Shown piece after piece: positions 11,105 to 63,477 of a stretch of 64,000 bases of DNA. Below the pieces are notes generated by a model. That model worked only from the letters and a program-made list of their open reading frames with translations. It was not told the DNA's origin and did no database searches. Every line of letters starts with the position of its first letter. Position 1 is the first letter of the stretch. Origin of the DNA: Octopus sinensis (Eukaryota); NCBI RefSeq assembly GCF_006345805.1, contig NC_043009.1:16120001-16184000 (forward strand), read 5' to 3'. The position numbers and the translations under genes are program-made.

Positions 11105-13680
11105 TTTAGATGACTGCCCACACGGAGCCCATAGCGATAATGAGTATTTCTTTAAAGATTCCAACATTTGCCAAGTTTGAGAGTAGGATATTATGGTCAA
11201 CCCTGTCGAACGCTTTACTGAAGTCAATATATATGACATCAGAGTTCGAACCTGATCCCAAGGCTTTCAGTATATCTTCAATGTGGTGTAAGAACTGTGT
11301 TAGACAGTCGCTGCCACAGCAAAAGCCATGCTGATTTTCATTTAGGAGTTCGTGGGTCTCCAGGAAGTCAGGTATTCTTGATCTTAACACTCTTTCAAAC
11401 ACTTTAATGATGTGGCAGGTAAGTGAGCTTGGGCGATAGTTGACTGCGAGGGATCTGTTTCCCTGTTTGAAAACCGGGATGACAGACTGAGATAGAAGCT
11501 GTTTCGGTATATAAACTGAGTCTAAGGAATTTCTCCAGAGGTTGGTCAGAGGGACTGCAAGTTGGTGTTTACATTCCTTCAGGAGACTTGCGGGAATCTC
11601 TCAGGGCCTACAGCAGAATAGTATTTGACCTCATTTATTGCTGCTATGATGTCAGAAGCAGTGAAGGTTATGTCCGAGATTTTATGTTGGGAATCAACTT
11701 CGTTCGCTTCTCTTACGTCAATATCAGTGGGATCACTAAAGACAGAGCAGTATTGTTTCTGCAGTATTTCTGCCATTTCTTTAGCATCGTGTTGGGGAAT
11801 GCCGTTATAATCGATCAATGGTCCAATGGGTGAGACAGTGGTTCTATGCTTATTTTCATAAGAATAGAACACTTTTGGGCTCTATTTGATGTTTTTGATT
11901 ACCCACTGTTATTCCACAGCTCTTTGATTTTCAATGGAAGTTTTCATGTCGGTCTGCAGATGAAGTTTTTCCAACTCCAGCCTTTTCATTGTTGATGAAT
12001 GTGGATGATGTATGTGGGAATATTTTAATTGGTTGATTTTTTTTATTGAGTCTTTTTATGCGCCTGATGAGTGTTTTTCTCTTTTTAGGGATCCGGTTTC
12101 TGTTTGTGTTAGTGGATTTCGTAGGAGCGTGTTTTGAGAATGTATAGGTGACAATGTTCTCAAAGTGCTGTCATGCGGTCTCAATTTGAGTGGAACTGAG
12201 AGTAAAAGACCAGTCGATGAAAGACAGATCCTTTCTGATTGCTCCGCAGTCCACTTTGTAGCAGTTTATGTTATCAAAGGAGTGCCATGGAGTTGGATTG
12301 GCTTGTTTGGTTTTTATATGTCGGGAATTAAAATTGGAGAGTACCATGTCGTGGTCTGAGAGGAGAGTTTTTTCAACAGAAATACTGTGAACGGAGCTTA
12401 AGTTGTTGATTAATATTAGATCCAAGATCGTTTTATTCTGTCTTGTTGGTTCGAGCACTAGCTGGGTCAGGAAGAATTTATCCATTAGATTAAAGAGTAA
12501 TTCTGCTGCTGCTTTATCTGGTGTAGAGCATTTGCCTAACTTCAGAGTATTTTTGGGCCAGTTTATATGAGGGAGGTTTAAATCACCCATCACTAGTATG
12601 TTTCCGGAGTTGTATTTTTGAAGGAAGGACTTGATTTTGTTGAGGCACTCTTCAAAGCACTTTAGAGGTGCTTGGGGAGGCCTATAAAGACCAATAATGA
12701 CTATGACTTTGACCTTGTTGAATACTGATATAGATTCACAATAGTCATTGGAAAATATTCCTTGGCATCAACTGAAAAGGAGTCAGGGAGAAAGATGGCT
12801 GTTCCTCCTTTATTTCGGTCTGTGCGATCTGCACAAACGATGGTGAAATCTTTTATTTTCACCTCGGCATCCATATGCGTGTTGTTTATGTGAGTTTCAG
12901 TAAGGATAAAGAAAGGGAAGCAATGTGCCGTTTCGGCAAGCCAACTCTCTATATATGGGAGCTTCCATTTTATGCAGTGATTGATGGGTTGATACCACGT
13001 ACATTTAATAGGAATGTCGAGGTAAGGGTAGTGTGATGTTTGCATTGTTCTAAGTTATGTTTTATGTTGTTCAGTGGTAGCAATGAGAGTAGTTTTTGTA
13101 TGGAGCTGTTTATCTATGATTTTCTAGTTGGTAGTGGGTATGTGGTCCTTGTGATTTGCATAAATGCTTGGTGATAGCTCATTAGATCTCCTGGCTTAAG
13201 TCGGCCTGTCAGTAAAAAAGAGTTGCTTCTTTGGTTTGCCACTTGGTCAGAGGATACATAGTTCATGTTTATGTTATTTGGTATTTTGGTTTTTTCATGG
13301 TTCTGTCTACGTTGTTTGACTGTAGGAGGTGAAATGTGGTTGTATTTTGTTTTTGTTGTTGTCGTAGGTCTCCTCTGTTGCTATTTATATTTATTTTGCG
13401 ATCGTTTTGTGTCCTTCAGATGGTGGTGGTTGCATTCTGGGTTCAAGCACGTCCTTAGTGACAGAGAAGTTTGGCACAGTTTATGATGGAAGAAGGTGCA
13501 TCCATTGCCTTTTGTGCATCCATATTTGGGATCAGGACCATGGACTCTGTATTTACGACAGTATCTGGGGTGGATGAATACGTAGGAAGCGACCAGTAGG
13601 TGAAACTACATATCCATTCGCACGTATCACTGTCCGTATTCTCCGTCATTTAATGTCTCTTCTACAACGTATCGGAAGAA
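11105..13680 (-). mobile_element. CR1/L2-like LINE: ORF1 with CCCH fingers, APE endonuclease and N-terminal RT (frameshifted, 3' part missing)
   Basis: ORF1 CRKY...CTKGNGCTFFH-KLC...C...CNHHH. APE motifs ILTETH, MGDLNLPHINW, ILDLIL and LSDHDMV. RT motifs ENQHGF and YIDFSKAFDRVDH. Confidence 0.85.
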
Positions 13681-24229: not shown

Positions 24230-24830
24230 ATGCATACTCAACATCAAGTGGCAAAGTCAAACATCTGACACAGAAGTTTTTGAAAAGGCAGGACGCACAA
24301 GCAGCCAGTTATTTATCCTATTTATCCGAATGCTTTCACAGGATCGTGCTGTGTGCATTTGGAGGATAATGGGGTTCTGAAATAGTTGTTCAGCGGTGAG
24401 CTGTGCAATAGAAAGGGTCCTGTGCACAAAATGCATAAAAGACAATCTGAAGTAACTGCAGAATGGTAGAAGCGTATTAGGCAAGAGGGGCGTCTTCAGC
24501 TCGAAAACATTCAGCGCAGGTGTCAGAGAACATAAAGCGTTGGAGGTATGAAAAGTGAGCCTGGTTATGTCAGCCAACCGAAATCCCTGAAAGATCAACT
24601 CTATGCAATGCCTTTCTCCTAGACCGAGGTATGTAGCGTGTGAAAATGCTTGCAAGGCGATTTCAAGTCTGAAGATATAATAGTTCGCAGTGATCATATC
24701 TAGCAACCTGGTTCGATCAATCCAGTGGAAATTACAACTTTCGTTTGTCATATATGCTTTAAAGCACATAGATTTGCAGTGGCACTGCATAAGCATCGGA
24801 GAGTTCATTGACGGAATATCTGAAATGTCA
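24230..24830 (+). mobile_element. Degenerate RTE-clade LINE 3' end with terminal C2H2 finger
   Basis: LFSGEL and CIKDNLK motifs, then FVCHICFKAHRFAVALHKHRRVH-stop at 24746-24811. Confidence 0.6.
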
Positions 24831-27032: not shown

Positions 27033-27856
27033 TTGCCCTCGCTCTTCTGTCTTTCACCAGTGTCACCCAGTTTTAAAATGGCATTTGATAATGCCTCTGT
27101 ATAGGCTGTGTCTTTCCGTACAGCAAATCCATAACCTTTCAAATCGAATGGATTTCCGATTTCCATAAGATCGCATTTGTCAGCAATTTCCCATCGAAGT
27201 GTCGGAGAATCCCAGATAAAGGCATATTTGGTGTTTCTTGCTCTAGCTAATCCTTCTTCTACCCTTTGTACAATGCTCTTGTCATTAAACCTCATATGGA
27301 GCCACATCTTACTATAATGACTAATATTGGTGTGCTTGAAAAAGTCTTCAATTTGGCTCTCATTTACCGTTCCATAGTCATATGCTGTTTGATATGCTAG
27401 GTCTGCTGCGTTTTCTATTGGTAAATAAATGTTAGTAACAGTGAGAAAAGCAGCAAGATTGGCTGTGTACACAGATATGATAATCAGTGAAAAAAGCCAC
27501 CATGAACTACTTATGATTCTACTAGATACTGCTAATGGGGAACTCTTCAGACTTCCACGTAGTAATGTTCCCCATATGTACCAAAAGCTCTCGAGGAAGT
27601 TGTGCGTATATTTGCGGTGTTTGTCAGAGTTGACTCGACTCACGCCAAACAGTGCAAGGCTGACCACGAGAAAGGATAAAAATATTGCAATCCACACATA
27701 GTTTGATAACGGAAATAAAAACTGAAACATCCACACTGTTCTCTGTGGCTTCTTTACGACCACTGTGGTACCTTTCGTCATGAATGACTTGGTAAAGTCC
27801 ACCACTTGTGATCGCTCAGGGGTAACGCTAAATGGTGCCAAAGCAACATCAGCTTT
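27033..27856 (-). CDS. iGluR-family exon (824 nt, phase 0-2): end of S1, M1, M2 pore loop, M3 and most of S2
   Basis: Acceptor ttatttcag|AAAGCT and donor GGCAA|GTAAGT. Motifs KADVALAPFSVTPER-VVDFTK, WWLFSLIIISVYTANLAAFLT, AFIWDS and KGYGFA. ORF 27029..27841. Confidence 0.97.
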
Positions 27857-27860
27857 CTGA

Positions 27861-27937
<77 letters not shown>

Positions 27938-27939
27938 TG

Positions 27940-28014
<75 letters not shown>

Positions 28015-28022
28015 TAATAATA
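27861..28022. repeat. (TAA)n microsatellite abutting the acceptor of the large exon
   Basis: Direct reading. Confidence 0.95.
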
Positions 28023-28577
28023 ATGCCCTGATGCAGTACCAGGCAGTGGCTCTCATGGCTTCTGATCTTAACTGATTGGAAGTGTTATGTACATTGTTTT
28101 GTCTTGGTATAAAAGATGGGCTACAGCAAAATATTCTGCTCAATACCACAGATTTGCTTGTCAGTTGTTTGACCTTAACCAGTTGAGCATGTCCCTTAGT
28201 GGCTGACGATATGTGCATCTCTGATCACGAGCAGAAGTAGTGGGGGAGCATCATAGCCATGTGTTGAGAAGGATTCTTTGGGGTTTGAATAATTCATCTC
28301 TGGAAACATGGGTGTTTCGTTCAACGTCCTTAAACAACCCTTATTCAGGGACCTTTTGAGCGGGATGCGTTACTCGATCTGAAGAAAATTCTAACTGGGC
28401 TCCACCTGCAAGGTCATGTGCTGCTTATCTTGATATGAGATCACCATGTCGCGCACATATGGTTGTGATGCATGTGCCTGGTGTACCCTTATCAGACGGG
28501 TAGTCATGATGGGTATACTGGGCTTCGTATATTTTACCCCAGTGTCACTTTGATGGCATGCTCTGCTCGCTCACTCA
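28023..28577 (+). mobile_element. Longest copy of family C (TAA)n-flanked non-autonomous element
   Basis: tgccctgatgcagtacc...gctcactc, with (TAA)n on both sides. Homologous to 2553-2813 and to the reverse complement of 33663-34194. Confidence 0.85.
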
Positions 28578-28589
28578 ATAATAATAATA

Positions 28590-28624
<35 letters not shown>

Positions 28625-28659
28625 TAATAATAATAATAAGGATAATAATAATAATAATA

Positions 28660-28691
<32 letters not shown>

Positions 28692-28711
28692 TGATGATGA
28701 TGATAATAATA

Positions 28712-28780
<69 letters not shown>

Positions 28781-28989
28781 CAATCATAATGATAATCATA
28801 ATGATAATCATAATAATAATATTGAAGCATAAACGAAACAGAATATATTACGTAACATCAGAATATGTACAGAGAAACAAGCATATTATTTCAGATAGCC
28901 CAGTCTTAGAGCCAAGAAGAATACATTTAGAATTAAAATTCATGTGAAGCTTTGAAACGTTGAAAATTTTGCCAGTATATCAAAGGTGG

Positions 28990-30480
28990 TGAGGATTATA
29001 ATGGTAATGTTTGAGCACCAGAAAATAATTTCGAATTTAGTACAACTGAGAAACAAACTTCCTTTATAAACATTAAATCTTGAAGTTAGCGTTCATTCTT
29101 TCATTTTAATACACGCAGTTGGTGCTACCCATTTAGAATAATCCACTTTTTGAATAATTCCATTTTCTCTAGTCTGCCTAATTCTTCCTCTACCTGTTTT
29201 ATCGTAGCAAAAGGTACCTTTTGAACACAGGTACAACGTTTTCATATACTTAGAAACAAGTCTGTATCTTAGTACAGAGACCTAATTTACCCAACAGCAC
29301 TTCAAAGAACAAGTTTTTAAATATTTTCTTCAACTCAGCTGATGCGTTATTTTGAGTGGTAGGAAAGCCATTTAATTTTTACAGTACAGACTTATGACAA
29401 GATCCCATAAGACGAACGACTCCATCCAGTCCGTACTGAACAGGCTGGTTGTATCTTTTAACAAGAAAACTTTTGCTCCACTGGTTTTAACACGAAATGT
29501 AATATCGCTCCACATTTCGCCAACGAAGTATAGTTTTTTTACCTGTCACACTTCGTGCAATTTTCGATGTTTTTTTAAAGTTAGGTTTCCCAATTCTTTT
29601 CCACGTGTCAGTATCAATAATCGAAATGTCGCTACCAGTAACTAGTTGTAATTTAATATTCACTTCATTTACTTTTACATGTAAAATTTCCTCTTTTTGG
29701 TGTCGTTCCTATTTTCCGTTGAGAAAACTTTAGAATTTATGTTCGATCTTCTAGACTTTGCACTGGCAACTGTAAAATTTCCGCGTTTTGAAAGGACAGT
29801 CTTTCTTTAAATGTAGGCCTGTAAGAAGTCCTTCTATTCTATATTTTTTACGTCCTGTCACAAGTTTACCATTCTTTGTCACTCCTCTGCAATTGTCTGT
29901 AGGTTTAAACTCTGGTCCGCTTGTTTAGGTTTTGTGAGAATTCTTGCCCGTGTTGCCGCATTTTTGTTTGCCGTCAGCCCTTGTACAAAGAAGAGGCACT
30001 TAAGCATATCAGGAGTTAGTTCCTTCAGTTTAAGCCTTTCGCACATTATGTTTACGGTGCCGGTATACGTGACAAAGACTTCATCCGCTTTTTAAACTAG
30101 ATTGTAGCATTCCCCCCATAGAGTGTTAAATAGGGAACTCTTATCACTGAACAATTTTGATAGTAATTCAACTGTTTCCTATAAACAAATTTCACTAGTT
30201 TTTTGGGGTAGTATATAGAGTTCTCTATTGTAGAGTTCGATACGCCGTCTGGTGAAAACGAACCTGTTAGACTCTTGGGTGCTTTGTTCGACTCTTGAGT
30301 ATTCTTGTTTGACTCTTGAGTACTGTTGTTCGACTCTTCAGTACTGTTGTTTCACTCTTTCAGATGTTGTTGCTACACTCCTATTGGTGTTTTCCAGTTA
30401 CTTATTCAACAGAATTATAGAAGCTAATATGTCTTCCATAATTGACAACTAGATATCACAAAAATTTGCATGAGCTCCGA
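28990..30480 (-). mobile_element. Ty3/Gypsy LTR retrotransposon internal remnant (gag, protease, start of RT)
   Basis: Gag-like LKCLFFVQGLT...TRARIL, protease LQLVTGSDISII...WKRIGKP (catalytic D lost), TDWMESF, and RT start VPFA...EELGRLE...SKWVAP. A 21-bp tandem repeat lies in gag at ~30286-30370. Confidence 0.75.
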
Positions 30481-30497
30481 ATCCTCGGCTCCAATAT

Positions 30498-30768
30498 TGT
30501 TGTATCGTCGATTGTTACGACGATACTTTTTTGCACTATAACCGTGTAGTAACAATAACATATATAACGAAGGGCAACAACAACGTAACAATCCAACAAA
30601 CTCTCCAGGAGCTATACTCGAATCAACAAACTATATTCAGACAACTACCAAAACGACACCTTACGATTTCCTGCAATTAACGCCTATTCTCTCTCATCTC
30701 ACTCAGACCGCTACTATTTATTCGGTCAGTCTATTCTGGCTGGCGGTGTCGTAACTCTCGCCACAACA
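30498..30768 (-). mobile_element. 5' LTR (271 bp) of the Gypsy remnant, followed by a PBS-like sequence (30481-30494)
   Basis: TGTTG...CAACA termini. The minus strand continues ata-ttggagccgaggat, then the gag start ATGGAAGAC. Confidence 0.7.
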
Positions 30769-30771
30769 ATA

Positions 30772-31146
30772 TCTTTCTATACATAAACGGCAAAATGTCT
30801 GTGTGTGTGTGTATGTGTGCGTGTCCATTATAAAAATCCACAATTTTTCAGTTAGAGGGCTCGCACTATCTATGGTCATTCAAAACCATCCAAGGGTGGT
30901 CGTGCACATCTTTACATTTCCCCAGTCACCCCGCAAAGCCATTAAAAATCAATAGAAGATACTTTTTATGAATTTCTATCCAAAACCCAATCAAAATTCC
31001 CGAAACTTGATACGCTAATTGAATGCCAGCTAGCTGTATGTGATTGGTCGGAGATTTGGATAGTACTCGCGTGTATGTATGCACGCACGCAGCTGTATAT
31101 GCATGCACTAGCACTATGTCCCGGCGTTGCCGGGTCACAGTGCTAG
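30772..31146 (+). mobile_element. Non-autonomous Helitron-like element
   Basis: A|TC 5' start (tctttctatacataaa), subterminal hairpin cccggc-gtt-gccggg, CTAG|T 3' end, and no TSD. Confidence 0.75.
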
Positions 31147-31609
31147 TCCATATATACATGTCAATATGTATTCAATAGCGCTTCTGGGTATGACTCGATT
31201 AAATGACTATGATTTTCCTTCTCAGTGACCAAACATCTATGGTGGGTTAGTTTATTTTTTATCCATGAAGCAGTTGAAATATGGAACTGAACAGCTGTGC
31301 AAAATATTTATTTGTTTTACATTTCATTTCCAAGTAATATTCACATGTTGCTTTTAAAATTATGCATTTGGTGTATTTAGGGATCATTACCTTTGGTAGC
31401 ATCGCAATATAGCATTTGAAAATGACACGTAAATCGAAATACTTTGGATTCATATACTAGTTTGATATTAACACAATTGCACACACATTTAAAAAAAAAA
31501 ACAGAAATTACAATAAAAGCACATAGGCTTATAATTATATATCAGCGTAATGTAGGGTAATATGAAATAAAAGCTAAAAAGTAAGTTGTATGTGATACTT
31601 GGTGCTTAC

Positions 31610-31831
31610 ATTATCCATTAGTTCTCGGATCATTCCTGTCCAACCTCTTTTCTTCTTGCTGCCAAATTTTCCATCGGGTGCGAGATAAATTTCAAATTGA
31701 AATTTTAAAATCTTTGACATGGCTTTAAGTATATCAATGCAAAACCCCTCCAACTGCAGGTTATTTCTGGACTTAACAGGATCATCGTTTAGATAATCGG
31801 TGGAGTTTCTCACTTGAACAAAAGGTGGTTC
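31610..31831 (-). CDS. iGluR-family exon (222 nt, phase 0-0), S1: EPPFV...EGFCIDILKAM...APDGKFG...GWTGMIRELMDN
   Basis: Acceptor ttttattctattcag| and donor AAT|GTAAGC. Canonical S1 motifs EPPFV, EGFCIDIL, DGKFG and WxGMIxEL. Confidence 0.95.
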
Positions 31832-32179
31832 CTGAATAGAATAAAAGAACATTTTATTATGTGCAGCAGCATTTGACAAAGTCAGAATCGTAGATTCCCA
31901 CCTACTGTGCTCCTCTTTCTCTCCCTCTTATCATCCCCCCTCTCTCTCCTTCTCTCATATTTTTATTTACATATATATATATACATACACCATACACACA
32001 CACATAGGCGACTTAACATGAAATCCTTATACGACAATGTGACATTCATTTGACTAAAGTATCTTTGGTCTGAAGAATAGCTAGTAGCAGAGTACCCTTC
32101 GTTTGAGTAATTACTACTTCCGAAGTTCTACTAACTAGGAGACCTATGTAGCTTGAATTTTATCTATTCCATTCTCTAA

Positions 32180-32560
<381 letters not shown>

Positions 32561-32738
32561 AGAGGGACGGACACATGGATGGATACGAGAAACTTTATCG
32601 ATCACTACAACTGTTTCCACCTATATAGCATCTACATCGAGGGATACACCTAAACTAGATGTTCAGTATCCTACCGACATGGGATCTTCCGTCTTTCTCA
32701 TGAATCATATATACTTTATATATATATGTGTGTATTTA

Positions 32739-33662: not shown

Positions 33663-34193
33663 TGAGTGAGAGAGCAGTGCATGCCATCAAAGTGACACTG
33701 GGGTACAAATATACGAAGCCCAGTGTACCCATCAGACACATGCATCACAACTATATGTGCGTGACATGGTGATCTCAGATCAAGATAAACAGCACATGAC
33801 CTTGCAGGTGGGGCCCAGTTAGGAATTTTCTTCTGGTCGAGTAGCCCATCCCGCTCAAGAGGTCCCTGAATAAGGGTTGTTTAAAGGCTGTTGAACGAAA
33901 CACCCATGTTTCCAGAGGTGAATTATTCAAACTCCAAAGAATCCCTCACAACACACGGCTATGATGCTCCCCCACTACTTCTGCTCATGATCAGAGATGC
34001 ACATATCGTCAGCCACTAAGGAACATGCTCAACTGGTTAAGGTCAAACAACTGACAAGCAAATCTGTGGTATTGAGCAGAATATTTGTTGTAGCCCATCT
34101 TTTATACCAAGACAAAACAAGTTTACATGATAACACTTCCAATCAGTTAACATCAAAAGCCATGAGGACCACTGCCTAGTACTGCATCAGGGC

Positions 34194-37473: not shown

Positions 37474-37602
37474 TATGATGGTTACTACTCTAAGAGGCTT
37501 CGTTCCAAAGATGTCTCCGCGGTACCGTGGAACACTGCTAACACTTCGATTGATCATAATTCTCGAGTCTCTGGTCTTCGGACCGCTACGCCAGGTACTG
37601 CG
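37474..37602 (-). CDS. iGluR-family exon (129 nt, phase 0-0), ATD-S1 linker: RSTWRSGPKTRDSRIMINRSVSSVPRYRGDIFGTKPLRVVTII
   Basis: Acceptor ttattcttgtcttag| and donor ATA|GTAAGT. LRVVTII splices directly to EPPFV, recreating the start-of-S1 motif. Absent from the ORF track. Confidence 0.85.
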
Positions 37603-43285: not shown

Positions 43286-43758
43286 CTATATCAACAACAA
43301 AAAATAGAAACGTCCTTTGCATGCAAGCAAGGTGGGCAAAAACGTATATAAAAAGTTCGCTACTTTCCACACGTTCCGATATAACGACCATCCATGTTTA
43401 TTTTTGTTCCGTTTCCTTGTACGTCTCCACCACTCTGTTTTTGTTCCCAAATCTAACTCTCCATATGTTCAAAATTTTGGAAGTTATGGGAGCAACTGTC
43501 TTCGAAGAGTCATTGTCGTTTAATGCTCGAAATGGGGAGATAGACAGCCGACAACTGATGAATATAAAAGTTTAAAGTATATTTAATTTGACATTAGGAA
43601 TGATTGTTTGCAGGTTCTGTGATGGCGTTTATCGTCGTCTCTAAACTGTAACAAATAGTATCCAGTAGGTGTCTTGAATGTAAGACAGTCTAATAGCAAA
43701 ATTGCTTGTCTAAAGCCTGTAGAAAACATGCTGATGAGAAAGAACTATATATATGTAT

Positions 43759-50293: not shown

Positions 50294-50398
50294 CGAGCCA
50301 TTGTGCATACCACCAAGAATGATAAGTTGGAGAAACTCTTCTTTGCGAACTTGGTTTTGTTGAAAAGATAGATGACCCGTACAACCATCTTTGTGAAT
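50294..50398 (-). CDS. iGluR-family exon (105 nt, phase 0-0): IHKDGCTGHLSFQQNQVRKEEFLQLIILGGMHNGS
   Basis: Acceptor ttttctattttcag| and donor TCG|GTAATG. DGCTGHLSF matches the ATD motif EGLTGxIxF. Not in the ORF track in this frame. Confidence 0.85.
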
Positions 50399-61453: not shown

Positions 61454-61696
61454 CGTTTGTATTGGTAACGCTAATGTAGAGTTAGATTCGACTTTTGTTA
61501 AGTTCTCATTTGTTGAATCCATTAATTCCATCGATAAAAGAAAAGCATCGTGAAGTATTGCATCAGCTAAGGTCAGGTTTTTATCGGTTAACATAGTTTC
61601 TGTACATTGGGACGAATTTTGGTCTACCATGAGCTGAAGCAATGTTACATTAGGATGCGCCGGAATTAGATCATCCAAATCTACTTCCTCCAGTCC
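61454..61696 (-). CDS. iGluR-family exon (243 nt, phase 0-0), ATD: GLEEVDLDDLIPAHPNVTLLQLMVD...DAILHDAFLL...LPIQT
   Basis: Acceptor ttacttttctag| and donor ACG|GTGAGA. NVTLLQLMVD and DAILHDA match the NITxFRLVD and AALMYDA ATD motifs of non-NMDA iGluRs. Overlaps ORF 61364..61678. Confidence 0.85.
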
Positions 61697-63423: not shown

Positions 63424-63477
63424 CATGTTGACTACTAACCAGTTATATGGATACGACATCATACTTAGTAATAGAGC
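63424..63477 (-). CDS. iGluR-family gene, first exon visible in window (54 nt, phase 0-0), ATD segment ALLLSMMSYPYNWLVVNM
   Basis: Acceptor tcatttcag| and donor ATG|GTAAGT on the minus strand. The peptide resembles the kainate/AMPA ATD segment (AQQVGMMSDYYHYIFTTL-like) and joins in frame to the 61696 exon. Confidence 0.8.

What the first reader, a model, noticed from the sequence alone, without database searches (positions are those of the whole stretch)
27033..31831. Non-NMDA-type iGluR with a glycine-type (GluN1/GluD-like) binding pocket: probably not glutamate-gated
Seen: S1 DGKFG and APFSVTPER (alpha-carboxyl Arg retained; Thr of PLT replaced by Ser), S2 GTVNESQIEDFF and AFIWDSPTL. Established: AMPA/kainate receptors use GST (GluA2 S654/T655) and E705 to bind the gamma-carboxyl of glutamate. 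GluN1 has DGKFG, a hydrophobic residue at 689 and AFIWD(732), and GluD has TPER/TPDR and AFVWD; these bind glycine/D-serine. Here the S654/T655 positions are Q/I and E705 is D after W, yet the M2-M3 spacing and WWLFSLIIIS are AMPA/kainate/delta-like. Inference: a divergent lophotrochozoan or cephalopod receptor gated by glycine, D-serine, GABA or an environmental ligand, possibly chemosensory.
Basis: partly seen in the sequence, partly recalled or inferred. Interest (0 to 1): 0.75.

Follow-up and report, generated by a model that had tools for sequence, protein, structure and literature searches.

The report
Octopus orphan glutamate-receptor-family gene
This is part of an octopus gene for a mollusc-only "orphan" member of the glutamate-receptor channel family. 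Its ligand pocket looks built for a small amino acid such as glycine rather than glutamate, a reasonable but untested idea about an already catalogued gene family.

Summary
On the minus strand, 27033-31831 holds two canonical exons of an ionotropic glutamate receptor, and every quoted motif is present. Four more upstream exons lie at 37.5-63.5 kb. The M4 exon is not in the window.

The protein is 97% identical to Octopus bimaculoides A0A0L8I6N7. It is the ortholog (62-63% identity, 100% bootstrap) of Aplysia californica GluR6, an "orphan" in the literature. That family is apparently the mollusc-specific "GluR-m6" clade.

In my tree it is a non-NMDA (AKDF) receptor, but it falls outside the AMPA, kainate, Delta, amphioxus-Phi, Epsilon and NMDA groups. 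Its nearest relative, with weak support, is a lophotrochozoan "GluR8-like" clade.

The pocket (F450, P-F-S, R485, S-Q-I, W-D) is conserved across the clade. It matches the S-x-hydrophobic/W-D pattern of GluN1, Delta and glycine-gated amphioxus GluE1, not the G-S-T/L-E pattern of glutamate receptors. A non-glutamate agonist (glycine, D-serine, alanine or GABA) is therefore the best guess, at about 0.6.

Published work warns that such rules fail: a cnidarian S-Q-P receptor responds to glutamate. Gastropod orthologs also carry Thr at 655. Nothing supports a chemosensory role.

Verdict: a new member of a known kind, of moderate interest.

The parts
63424..63477 (-). Exon a: amino-terminal domain (ATD) segment ALLLSMMSYPYNWLVVNM, flanked by tttcag| and |gtaagt
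   Evidence: tblastn with Aplysia GluR6 and Elysia protein; splice sites and frame
61454..61696 (-). Exon b: ATD segment GLEEVDLDD...ALPIQT; acceptor ttttctag|, donor |GTGAGA (donor position inferred)
50294..50398 (-). Exon c: end of ATD, IHKDGCTGHLSFQQNQVRKEEFLQLIILGGMHNGS
37474..37602 (-). Exon d: ATD-LBD linker, RSTWRSGPKTRDSRIMINRSVSSVPRYRGDIFGTKPLRVVTII
   Evidence: 98% identical to P0001 residues 95-137; splice sites
31610..31831 (-). Exon e: first half of S1 (LBD upper lobe), EPPFVQVR...GMIRELMDN; DGKFG at 31675-31661 (F at the GluA2 Y450 position)
27033..27856 (-). Exon f: rest of S1, M1, pore loop M2, M3 and nearly all of S2, in one 824-nt exon. It ends in phase 2 (AA|GTAAGT) one codon before the conserved WW that opens the M4 exon in orthologs
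27812..27838 (-). APFSVTPER: upper-lobe ligand contacts P478, F479, S480 and R485 (GluA2 mature numbering)
27536..27592 (-). Pore loop ESFWYIWGTLLRGSLKSSP. The Q/R-site codon is CGT (Arg) at 27559-27557, and the +4 site is Lys instead of Asp/Glu
27437..27511 (-). M3 gate helix SSSWWLFSLIIISVYTANLAAFLTV (VYTANLAAF version of the SYTANLAAF motif)
27338..27376 (-). YGTVNESQIEDFF: lower-lobe alpha-F motif S653-Q654-I655 in place of G-S-T
27197..27226 (-). YAFIWDSPTL: beta10/alpha-I motif W704-D705 in place of L-E

Best explanation
The region is the core of an octopus gene for a tetrameric ligand-gated cation-channel subunit of the iGluR superfamily, non-NMDA (AKDF) branch. It is the cephalopod ortholog of Aplysia californica GluR6. 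That makes it a member of a mollusc-restricted orphan lineage, inferred from the name to be 'GluR-m6' of Andouche et al. 2021.

The window holds six in-frame exons on the minus strand, covering the distal ATD, the linker, S1, M1-M2-M3 and S2. The first ATD exons and the M4/C-terminal exon lie outside it.

Mechanism, inferred step by step:
- An alpha-amino (or omega-amino) acid docks between the two LBD lobes. Its carboxylate goes to R485 and to the backbone and side chain at P478/S480. Its amine goes to D705.
- W704, I655 and Q654 fill or de-polarise the space where glutamate's gamma-carboxylate sits in AMPA/kainate receptors.
- The preferred agonist is therefore most likely a small neutral amino acid (glycine, D-serine or alanine) or GABA, not L-glutamate.
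- Lobe closure pulls on the M3 (V/I)YTANLAAF gate.
- A genomically fixed Arg at the Q/R site, with no acidic +4 residue, predicts low Ca2+ permeability, low conductance and no polyamine block. It may also mean the subunit works mainly in heteromers.

Shown: gene structure, orthology, pocket and pore residues, and their conservation. Inferred: ligand class, permeation and assembly.

Sub-confidences: identity and orthology about 0.9; non-glutamate agonist about 0.6.
For: Gene model:
- ORFs and canonical splice sites, all in frame.
- The exons cover Aplysia GluR6 residues ~229-751.
- Pfam finds PF10613 and PF00060, plus the ATD (PF01094) in the Aplysia ortholog.
- The AF2 model has mean pLDDT 83.8, and its best Foldseek hits are GluK2/GluA LBD-TMD structures.

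Orthology:
- 97% identity to O. bimaculoides A0A0L8I6N7.
- 62-63% to Aplysia GluR6, NP_001191542.
- The clade gets 100% bootstrap.
- An exhaustive search of 1.84 billion representatives found only five 50%-identity clusters above 300 bits. Four are named and all four are molluscs; the fifth (P0008) is unnamed.
- The intron phase and position before WW match ortholog loci.

Class:
- The clade is excluded from the AMPA+kainate superclade (74.5%).
- It is not in the Delta clade, which includes GABA-gated AcaGluD's relatives (0/100 bootstraps).
- It groups with the AKDF branch at 61%.
- In class-HMM scores, its own clade gives 691 against R8-like 398, KA 362, Delta 354, AMPA 341, Epsilon 315 and Phi 278.

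Pocket:
- Octopus is F-P-F-S-R / V-S-Q-I / W-D / Y.
- GluN1 is F-P-L-T-R / V-S-S-V / W-D / F, GluD2 is S-A-V / W-D, and glycine-gated amphioxus GluE1 is S-Q-P / W-D.
- GluE1 shares 9/15 pocket residues, the best among characterised receptors; GluA2 shares 4/15.
- R485, V650, Q654, W704, D705, P707 and Y732 are invariant in 14-21 clade sequences, although only 26% of all positions are invariant.

Literature rules:
- Wang 2026 reports Gly versus Ser at the first alpha-F residue, and that GST->SSV shifts AMPA receptors toward glycine/alanine.
- Zeng 2021 and Ramos-Vicente 2018 use the 653/655 rule.

Pore: Arg is encoded by CGT and is invariant in 21/21 clade members.
Against: - No functional data exist for any member of this clade in the held literature.
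- Sequence rules are fallible. Nematostella Epsilon 5500937, with alpha-F S-Q-P, responds to glutamate and not glycine. Mutating these residues in starfish Delta or Trichoplax AKDF does not switch ligand. In Delta receptors the binding residues do not decide between GABA and D-serine.
- Gastropod orthologs have Thr at 655. Three unnamed orthologs have Gly at 653. Glutamate binding is therefore not excluded for the family.
- The M4 exon is absent from the 27 kb downstream, so completeness of the gene is unproven.
- The tree is neighbour-joining only, and deep nodes are weak.
Confidence: 0.6

Rival explanations
1. It is an ordinary glutamate-gated channel subunit despite the unusual pocket. Glutamate would fit with its gamma-carboxylate contacting Q654 (or T655 in gastropods) and water.
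For: - A cnidarian receptor with alpha-F S-Q-P is activated by glutamate/aspartate and not glycine.
- GluN2 subunits bind glutamate with Asp at the 705 position (established knowledge).
- Gastropod orthologs keep Thr655, and some orthologs have Gly653.
- The G->S change in GluA2 does not lower glutamate potency.
Against: - W704, Ser653 and Ile655 together are the pattern of glycine/D-serine/GABA receptors.
- GST->SSV in GluA2 drastically lowers glutamate potency.
- All glutamate-selective receptors aligned by Wang 2026 have Gly at 653.
Confidence: 0.22
2. It binds ligand but is a poorly conducting or non-gating subunit. That would make it an obligate heteromer partner or a synaptic organiser like vertebrate GluD, rather than an autonomous channel.
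For: - Arg at the Q/R site with a non-acidic +4 residue is invariant. In AMPA/kainate receptors, Arg there lowers conductance and hampers homomeric assembly (established knowledge).
- Oyster 'GluD' gave no currents in oocytes.
- Octopus has lost the hydrophobic pre-M4 helix pattern.
Against: - The M3 gate motif and pore loop are well conserved.
- Invertebrate Delta receptors do gate.
- Genomically encoded Arg at this site occurs in about 23 of the other 156 iGluRs sampled.
Confidence: 0.1
3. It is a chemosensory receptor for an environmental ligand, analogous to IRs.
For: IRs derive from AKDF-type iGluRs, and IR25 is expressed in cephalopod suckers and olfactory organ (cited). The lineage is mollusc-specific.
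Against: - It keeps an ATD and the full amino-acid-binding set R485/D705.
- The pocket is invariant rather than diversified.
- The clade appears to be single-copy per species rather than expanded.
- Mollusc surveys list GluR-m6 with canonical non-NMDA iGluRs, not IRs.
- Aplysia iGluR genes, GluR6 included, are expressed in CNS ganglia.
Confidence: 0.05
4. It is a truncated gene or pseudogene lacking M4.
For: No M4 exon lies in the 27 kb downstream, although the same HMM finds it 2.1 kb downstream in an ortholog locus. The O. bimaculoides model also lacks M4.
Against: - All six exons are open with canonical splice sites.
- The terminal donor AA|GTAAGT is conserved in position and phase with orthologs.
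- Identity to O. bimaculoides is 97%.
- Other introns in this gene reach 11-13 kb, so an intron over 27 kb is plausible.
Confidence: 0.03

Closest known systems
Aplysia californica GluR6 (NP_001191542 / AAP41208), an 'orphan' iGluR of Greer et al. 2017; by name, the GluR-m6 mollusc-specific clade of Andouche et al. 2021
   Same: - 62-63% identity over S1-M3-S2, and 100% bootstrap clade.
- Same domain order, including the ATD.
- Same W-D, S-Q-x, R485 and Y732.
- Same Arg at the Q/R site.
   Different: - Aplysia has Q480 and T655 where octopus has S480 and I655.
- Octopus has a polar pre-M4 segment.
- Neither protein has been functionally characterised.
Lophotrochozoan 'GluR8-like' clade (e.g. 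Pecten maximus XP_033742742, Tubulanus XP_074651659, Owenia, Capitella)
   Same: - Nearest class profile (398 bits).
- Most frequent sister in bootstraps (37-47%).
- Shares DGKFGSK, P-x-S, S653, a hydrophobic residue at 655, and W-D.
   Different: - Only about 40-44% identity.
- Gln or Gly at the Q/R site and an acidic +4 residue.
- S-G-V rather than S-Q-I.
- Also present in annelids and nemerteans.
GluN1 (glycine/D-serine-binding NMDA subunit)
   Same: The pocket pattern F450, P478, R485, V650, S653, beta-branched hydrophobic 655 and W704-D705. The AFIWDS string is identical.
   Different: - Different subfamily (BLAST about 199 bits; separate in the tree).
- Different pore (N-site with an extra residue, VWAGF instead of WW).
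- GluN1 needs GluN2/3 partners.
Delta receptors (vertebrate GluD2, which binds D-serine/glycine; starfish AcaGluD, which is GABA-gated)
   Same: S-x-hydrophobic / W-D lower lobe, a TP[ED]R-type S1 strand, and the WW...YTANLAAF M3.
   Different: - Not in the Delta clade (0/100 bootstraps).
- Scores 354 against the Delta HMM, versus 520-576 for true Deltas.
- F450 versus Y, and P478 versus A/G.
- Arg versus Gln at the Q/R site.
Amphioxus GluE1 (Epsilon subfamily; the B. lanceolatum ortholog is glycine-gated, Ramos-Vicente 2018)
   Same: Highest pocket identity among characterised receptors (9/15): F450, F479, R485, V650, S653, Q654 and W-D.
   Different: - Epsilon subfamily, reported lost in protostomes.
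- P655 rather than I.
- Different pore.

Membership tests
iGluR superfamily | S1-M1-pore loop-M3-S2 order with Lig_chan-Glu_bd and Lig_chan domains and the (S)YTANLAAF gate | tested here: met
   - Pfam PF10613 6.4e-35 and PF00060 2.7e-28.
- VYTANLAAF is present.
- AF2 model plus Foldseek hits GluK2/GluA LBD-TMD at E about 1e-32.
iGluR superfamily | Fourth transmembrane helix M4 after S2 | tested here: inconclusive
   No M4 exon at 1-27032. The same HMM detects it in ortholog locus L002. It probably lies beyond the window.
AKDF (non-NMDA) subfamily | Groups with AMPA/kainate/Delta/Phi rather than NMDA or Epsilon; WW before M3; no extra residue in the pore loop | tested here: met
   - NJ bipartition AKDF versus Epsilon+NMDA at 61%.
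- Best PDB sequence hits are GluK3/GluK1/GluA2 at 249-259 bits.
- Pore/M3 alignment without gaps.
- Support is moderate only.
Aplysia GluR6 orthogroup (GluR-m6) | Monophyly with Aplysia GluR6 to the exclusion of other iGluRs | tested here: met
   100% bootstrap in three analyses. The Aplysia protein scores 403 bits to octopus against at most 286 to any anchor. The link to the published label 'GluR-m6' rests on the name only, because the Andouche paper is not held.
AMPA class | Inside the AMPA clade; G-S-T and L-E pocket | tested here: not met
   Outside the AMPA+kainate superclade (74.5%). The pocket is S-Q-I / W-D.
Kainate class | Inside the kainate clade; G-[SA]-T and M-E pocket | tested here: not met
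   (KA_core HMM 301 bits against 768 for GluK1).
Delta class | Monophyly with GluD1/2 and the invertebrate Deltas (starfish, acorn worm, amphioxus, nemertean) | tested here: not met
   0/100 bootstraps for m6+Delta. Delta HMM gives 354 against 520-576 for true members. I could not check whether the published mollusc 'Delta' (C. gigas XM_011429946, Aplysia XM_013079949) is this clade. A gastropod survey lists GluD and GluR-m6 as separate clades.
Phi class (deuterostome GluF) | Monophyly with amphioxus/hemichordate GluF | tested here: not met
   Lowest HMM score (278). The pocket is unlike GluF1/GluF2.
Mollusc Phi I-IV / Zeta classes of Zeng et al. 2021 | Placement in their ML tree | not testable with these tools
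   Their sequences and alignment are not held. A mollusc-only AKDF lineage outside A/K/D is compatible with 'Zeta' or mollusc 'Phi'.
NMDA GluN1 | Monophyly with GluN1; N-site pore; VWAGF M3 start | tested here: not met
   Only the pocket is similar.
Variant ionotropic receptors (IR25a/IR8a and divergent IRs) | Monophyly with IRs; usually loss of R485/D705 or of the ATD | not tested
   No IR reference sequences were available. Indirectly, the ATD, R485 and D705 are retained, and mollusc surveys place GluR-m6 with the iGluRs.
Glycine/D-serine-type ligand pocket (functional class, not a clade) | Ser (not Gly) at 653, a non-polar residue at 655, bulky aromatic plus Asp at 704/705, and R485 retained | tested here: met
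   Actual ligand binding is not testable here, and exceptions to the rule are known.

The most novel reading that the evidence does not exclude
GluR-m6 subunits are glycine/D-serine- (or GABA-) binding, Ca2+-impermeable partners that co-assemble with glutamate-binding AKDF subunits. That would give molluscs, including the large cephalopod brain, an NMDA-like two-agonist receptor built entirely from non-NMDA subunits. Alternatively, they form homomeric excitatory glycine/GABA receptors unique to molluscs.
Probability: 0.15. Interest if true: 0.7.

Novelty: new member of a known kind. Interest (0 to 1): 0.38.

Why it matters
Several iGluR lineages once assumed to be glutamate receptors have turned out to be gated by glycine, D-serine, alanine, aspartate or GABA. 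The mollusc-specific lineages remain entirely uncharacterised, even though Aplysia and Octopus are classic models of synaptic plasticity.

This clade pairs a strictly conserved GluN1-like pocket with a hard-coded Arg in the pore. That makes it a concrete candidate for de-orphanisation. A positive result would add an excitatory non-glutamate transmitter pathway, or a co-agonist mechanism, to mollusc neurobiology.

As it stands, this is a sequence-based prediction of a kind already made for neighbouring classes.

Tried and rejected
1. Searching for the M4 exon in 1-27032. I tried tblastn with gastropod proteins, a general and a family-specific M4 HMM on six-frame fragments, and WW/hydrophobic scans. 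All were negative, while the positive control in ortholog locus L002 worked.

2. An alternative, earlier donor after LGDTG. I rejected it because 16 ortholog ORFs end in the same ...EGK|GTAAG junction, and the L002 M4 exon starts A|TGGTGG.

3. Delta membership. Rejected.

4. Fetching published mollusc Delta, Phi or Zeta sequences from supplements.
   - Only amphioxus Phi/Epsilon sequences were in the stored part of the eLife alignment.
   - The OCR'd PNAS alignment was too noisy.
   - The CSBJ and Biochemistry supplements, and the Andouche 2021 paper, are not held.

5. Looking for mollusc Deltas with the Tubulanus Delta as query. It returned only 11 hits, none from molluscs. It did recover AcaGluD, whose residues E475, V548, S713 and D763 match the paper.

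6. Identifying the organisms behind the unnamed orthologs. The records give only run or assembly accessions.

7. Foldseek of the AF2 model. It confirms the fold but does not discriminate between classes.

8. Searching the literature for the accession numbers. No paper found.

Full report
**What is in the sequence**

The window is AT-rich eukaryotic DNA full of microsatellites.
- Exon e runs 31831-31610. It follows the acceptor ...tattcag and ends ...GATAAT|gtaagc.
- Exon f runs 27856-27033. It follows tttcag and ends ...GGCAA|GTAAGT in phase 2.

tblastn with gastropod relatives finds four more upstream exons, all with canonical splice sites and all in frame:
- 63477-63424
- 61696-61454
- 50398-50294
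- 37602-37474

Together the six exons correspond to residues ~229-751 of the 875-residue Aplysia ortholog. They cover the distal ATD, the linker, S1, M1, the pore loop, M3 and S2.

Pfam finds Lig_chan-Glu_bd (6.4e-35) and Lig_chan (2.7e-28). An AlphaFold2 model of exons e+f has mean pLDDT 83.8, and its best structural matches are GluK2 and GluA LBD-TMD structures.

**The missing 3' end**

In every ortholog the large exon ends at the same ...EGK junction, and the next exon begins with WW followed by M4. In ortholog locus L002 that exon lies 2.1 kb downstream and is found at E=5e-15.

In this window no such exon exists in the 27 kb downstream. Other introns of the gene are 11-13 kb, so an intron longer than 27 kb is the likeliest reading. 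Completeness of the gene is nevertheless unproven.

The O. bimaculoides protein model reads on into scraps at 24821-24579 and has no M4. Its first 94 residues do not match an ATD. Both ends look mis-annotated.

**Identity**

The protein is 97% identical to O. bimaculoides A0A0L8I6N7. An exhaustive HMMER pass over 1.84 billion representatives found only five 50%-identity clusters above 300 bits:
- Octopus
- Aplysia californica GluR6 (NP_001191542 / AAP41208; 62-63% identity)
- Nucella
- Batillaria
- one unnamed cluster

Scores then drop to 292 bits. About 17 further unnamed exon-sized ORFs from sequencing runs are 56-64% identical.

Greer et al. 2017 list Aplysia GluR6 as an 'orphan' that fits none of AMPA, kainate or NMDA. 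Later mollusc surveys, following Andouche et al. 2021, speak of mollusc-specific 'GluR-m6/9' clades kept separate from GluA, GluK, GluD, GluN and the IRs. I infer from the name that m6 is this clade, because the Andouche paper is not held.

**Phylogeny**

I built a 157-sequence, 358-column alignment with reference sequences taken from tool outputs:
- GluA2, GluN1, GluD2, GluK1 and GluK3, checked against the PDB
- amphioxus Phi and Epsilon sequences from the eLife alignment

Neighbour-joining with bootstraps gave these results:
- The octopus-gastropod clade is recovered at 100%.
- An AMPA+kainate superclade of 109 sequences excludes it, at 74.5%.
- A Delta clade does not contain it (0/100 bootstraps). 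That clade holds human GluD2, amphioxus, starfish, acorn worm and a nemertean.
- AKDF separates from Epsilon+NMDA at 61%.

Class-profile scoring agrees. The octopus sequence scores 691 bits to its own clade. It scores 398 to a lophotrochozoan 'GluR8-like' clade, 362 to kainate-like, 354 to Delta, 341 to AMPA, 315 to Epsilon and 278 to Phi.

The GluR8-like clade is also the commonest sister in bootstraps (37-47%). The main alternative is attraction to a sponge sequence (26%). Deep placement is therefore unresolved.

What is solid is 'AKDF, mollusc-restricted, and not AMPA, kainate, Delta, deuterostome Phi, Epsilon or NMDA'. This fits the mollusc-only 'Zeta' class, or mollusc 'Phi', of Zeng et al. 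2021. I could not test that because their data are not held.

**The pocket**

Using GluA2 mature numbering, the octopus residues are: E402, F450, P478, F479, S480, R485, V650, S653, Q654, I655, W704, D705, T708 and Y732.

| Receptor | 450 | 478-480 | 485 | 653-655 | 704-705 |
|---|---|---|---|---|---|
| Octopus | F | P-F-S | R | S-Q-I | W-D |
| GluA2 | Y | P-L-T | R | G-S-T | L-E |
| GluN1 | F | P-L-T | R | S-S-V | W-D |
| GluD2 | Y | A-L-T | R | S-A-V | W-D |
| AcaGluD (GABA-gated starfish) | Y | G-M-V | R | S-S-L | W-D |
| Amphioxus GluE1 (ortholog is glycine-gated) | F | S-F-T | R | S-Q-P | W-D |

Identity to octopus over 15 pocket positions is 9 for GluE1, 7 for GluN1, 6 for GluD2 and AcaGluD, and 4 for GluA2.

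Within the clade, R485, V650, Q654, W704, D705, P707 and Y732 are invariant, although only 26% of all positions are invariant. The pocket is therefore maintained by selection.

Variation within the clade matters:
- Position 480 is S or Q.
- Position 653 is S in 17 sequences, G in three and Q in one.
- Position 655 is I in most sequences but T in the named gastropods.

The same S-Q-x / W-D pattern also occurs in a sponge (Sycon) AKDF protein and a Trichoplax AKDF protein. It looks like an old state of the family rather than a novel shift.

**What the pocket predicts**

Wang et al. 2026 found Gly at the first alpha-F position in every glutamate-selective receptor they aligned, and Ser (rarely Tyr or Ala) in glycine- or other-ligand receptors. 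Changing GST to SSV in GluA2 collapses glutamate potency and lets alanine and glycine become the best agonists. Ramos-Vicente 2018 and Zeng 2021 use the same 653/655 rule. By these rules the octopus subunit is a non-glutamate receptor.

The same work gives clear warnings:
- A Nematostella Epsilon receptor with S-Q-P responds to glutamate and not glycine.
- Mutating these residues in starfish Delta or Trichoplax AKDF does not switch ligand.
- Rosano et al. 2024 showed that binding residues alone do not separate GABA from D-serine selectivity in Deltas.

I therefore put a non-glutamate agonist (glycine, D-serine, alanine or GABA) at about 0.6. I cannot choose among these ligands.

**The pore**

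The Q/R site is Arg, encoded by CGT at 27559-27557. It is Arg in all 21 clade sequences. The +4 position, Asp or Glu in 139 of 157 iGluRs sampled, is K, T, N, Q, S or E here.

From established AMPA/kainate biophysics, this predicts low Ca2+ permeability, low unitary conductance and no polyamine block. It also hints at function in heteromers. That is inference.

- Nothing in the sequence supports a chemosensory role. The subunit keeps its ATD and its amino-acid-binding residues, and the clade is not expanded. Greer et al. detected all Aplysia iGluR genes in CNS ganglia.
- The 'GluD-like' similarity is confined to the pocket and the TPER strand.

**Verdict**

The gene is a new member (or a second-species copy) of an already catalogued mollusc-specific orphan iGluR family. 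It is a good candidate for de-orphanisation rather than a surprise.

Noticed in passing
window 27557-27559 (minus strand): The pore Q/R site is a genomically encoded Arg (CGT). It is invariant in all 21 clade sequences, and the +4 residue is non-acidic in nearly all of them.
   Followed up: yes
window 1-27032: No M4/C-terminal exon lies within 27 kb downstream of exon f, although the ortholog locus L002 has it 2.1 kb downstream. Either the last intron exceeds 27 kb or the gene is truncated.
   Followed up: yes
window 24579-24821 and 43355-43554 (minus strand): The O. bimaculoides protein model A0A0L8I6N7 draws its C-terminus and part of its N-terminus from these intronic or downstream scraps. 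In this window they contain stops and frame changes. The public model lacks M4 and most of the ATD and looks mis-annotated.
   Followed up: partly
window 27033-27059 (minus strand): The pre-M4 helix is polar in Octopus (GERQKSEGK). Sixteen orthologs have G[IVM]LY[RK]LEGK, and other iGluRs have a hydrophobic L..L pattern. This looks like a lineage-specific change of unknown effect.
   Followed up: partly
window 28129-28334 and 33881-34086: Two copies of an interspersed repeat in inverted orientation (206 nt, 95% complementary) sit in the two introns that flank exon e. This is the arrangement that can favour back-splicing.
   Followed up: no
window 27861-28014: A (TTA)n microsatellite of about 150 nt ends a few bases upstream of the acceptor site of the large exon f.
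   Followed up: no
window 12171-12593 (minus strand): This ORF has an endonuclease-reverse-transcriptase type domain (PF14529, E=7.7e-8). It is a LINE fragment downstream of the receptor exons.
   Followed up: partly
window 29093-30046 (minus strand): Short ORF scraps in intron e-f carry a faint aspartyl-protease-like match (E=0.049). They may be a decayed retroelement, but the match is not significant.
   Followed up: partly
window 32127-32620: Long compound microsatellite arrays, (TA)n, (TAGA)n, (CAGA)n and (TAGG)n, lie just upstream of exon e.
   Followed up: no
related proteins P0019, P0021, P0022, P0123-P0128: A second lophotrochozoan clade ('GluR8-like', in molluscs, annelids and a nemertean) also has DGKFGSK, S-G-[VI] and W-D. 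It falls outside the AMPA+kainate superclade in my tree, although Aplysia GluR8 was filed under AMPA by Greer et al. 2017.
   Followed up: partly
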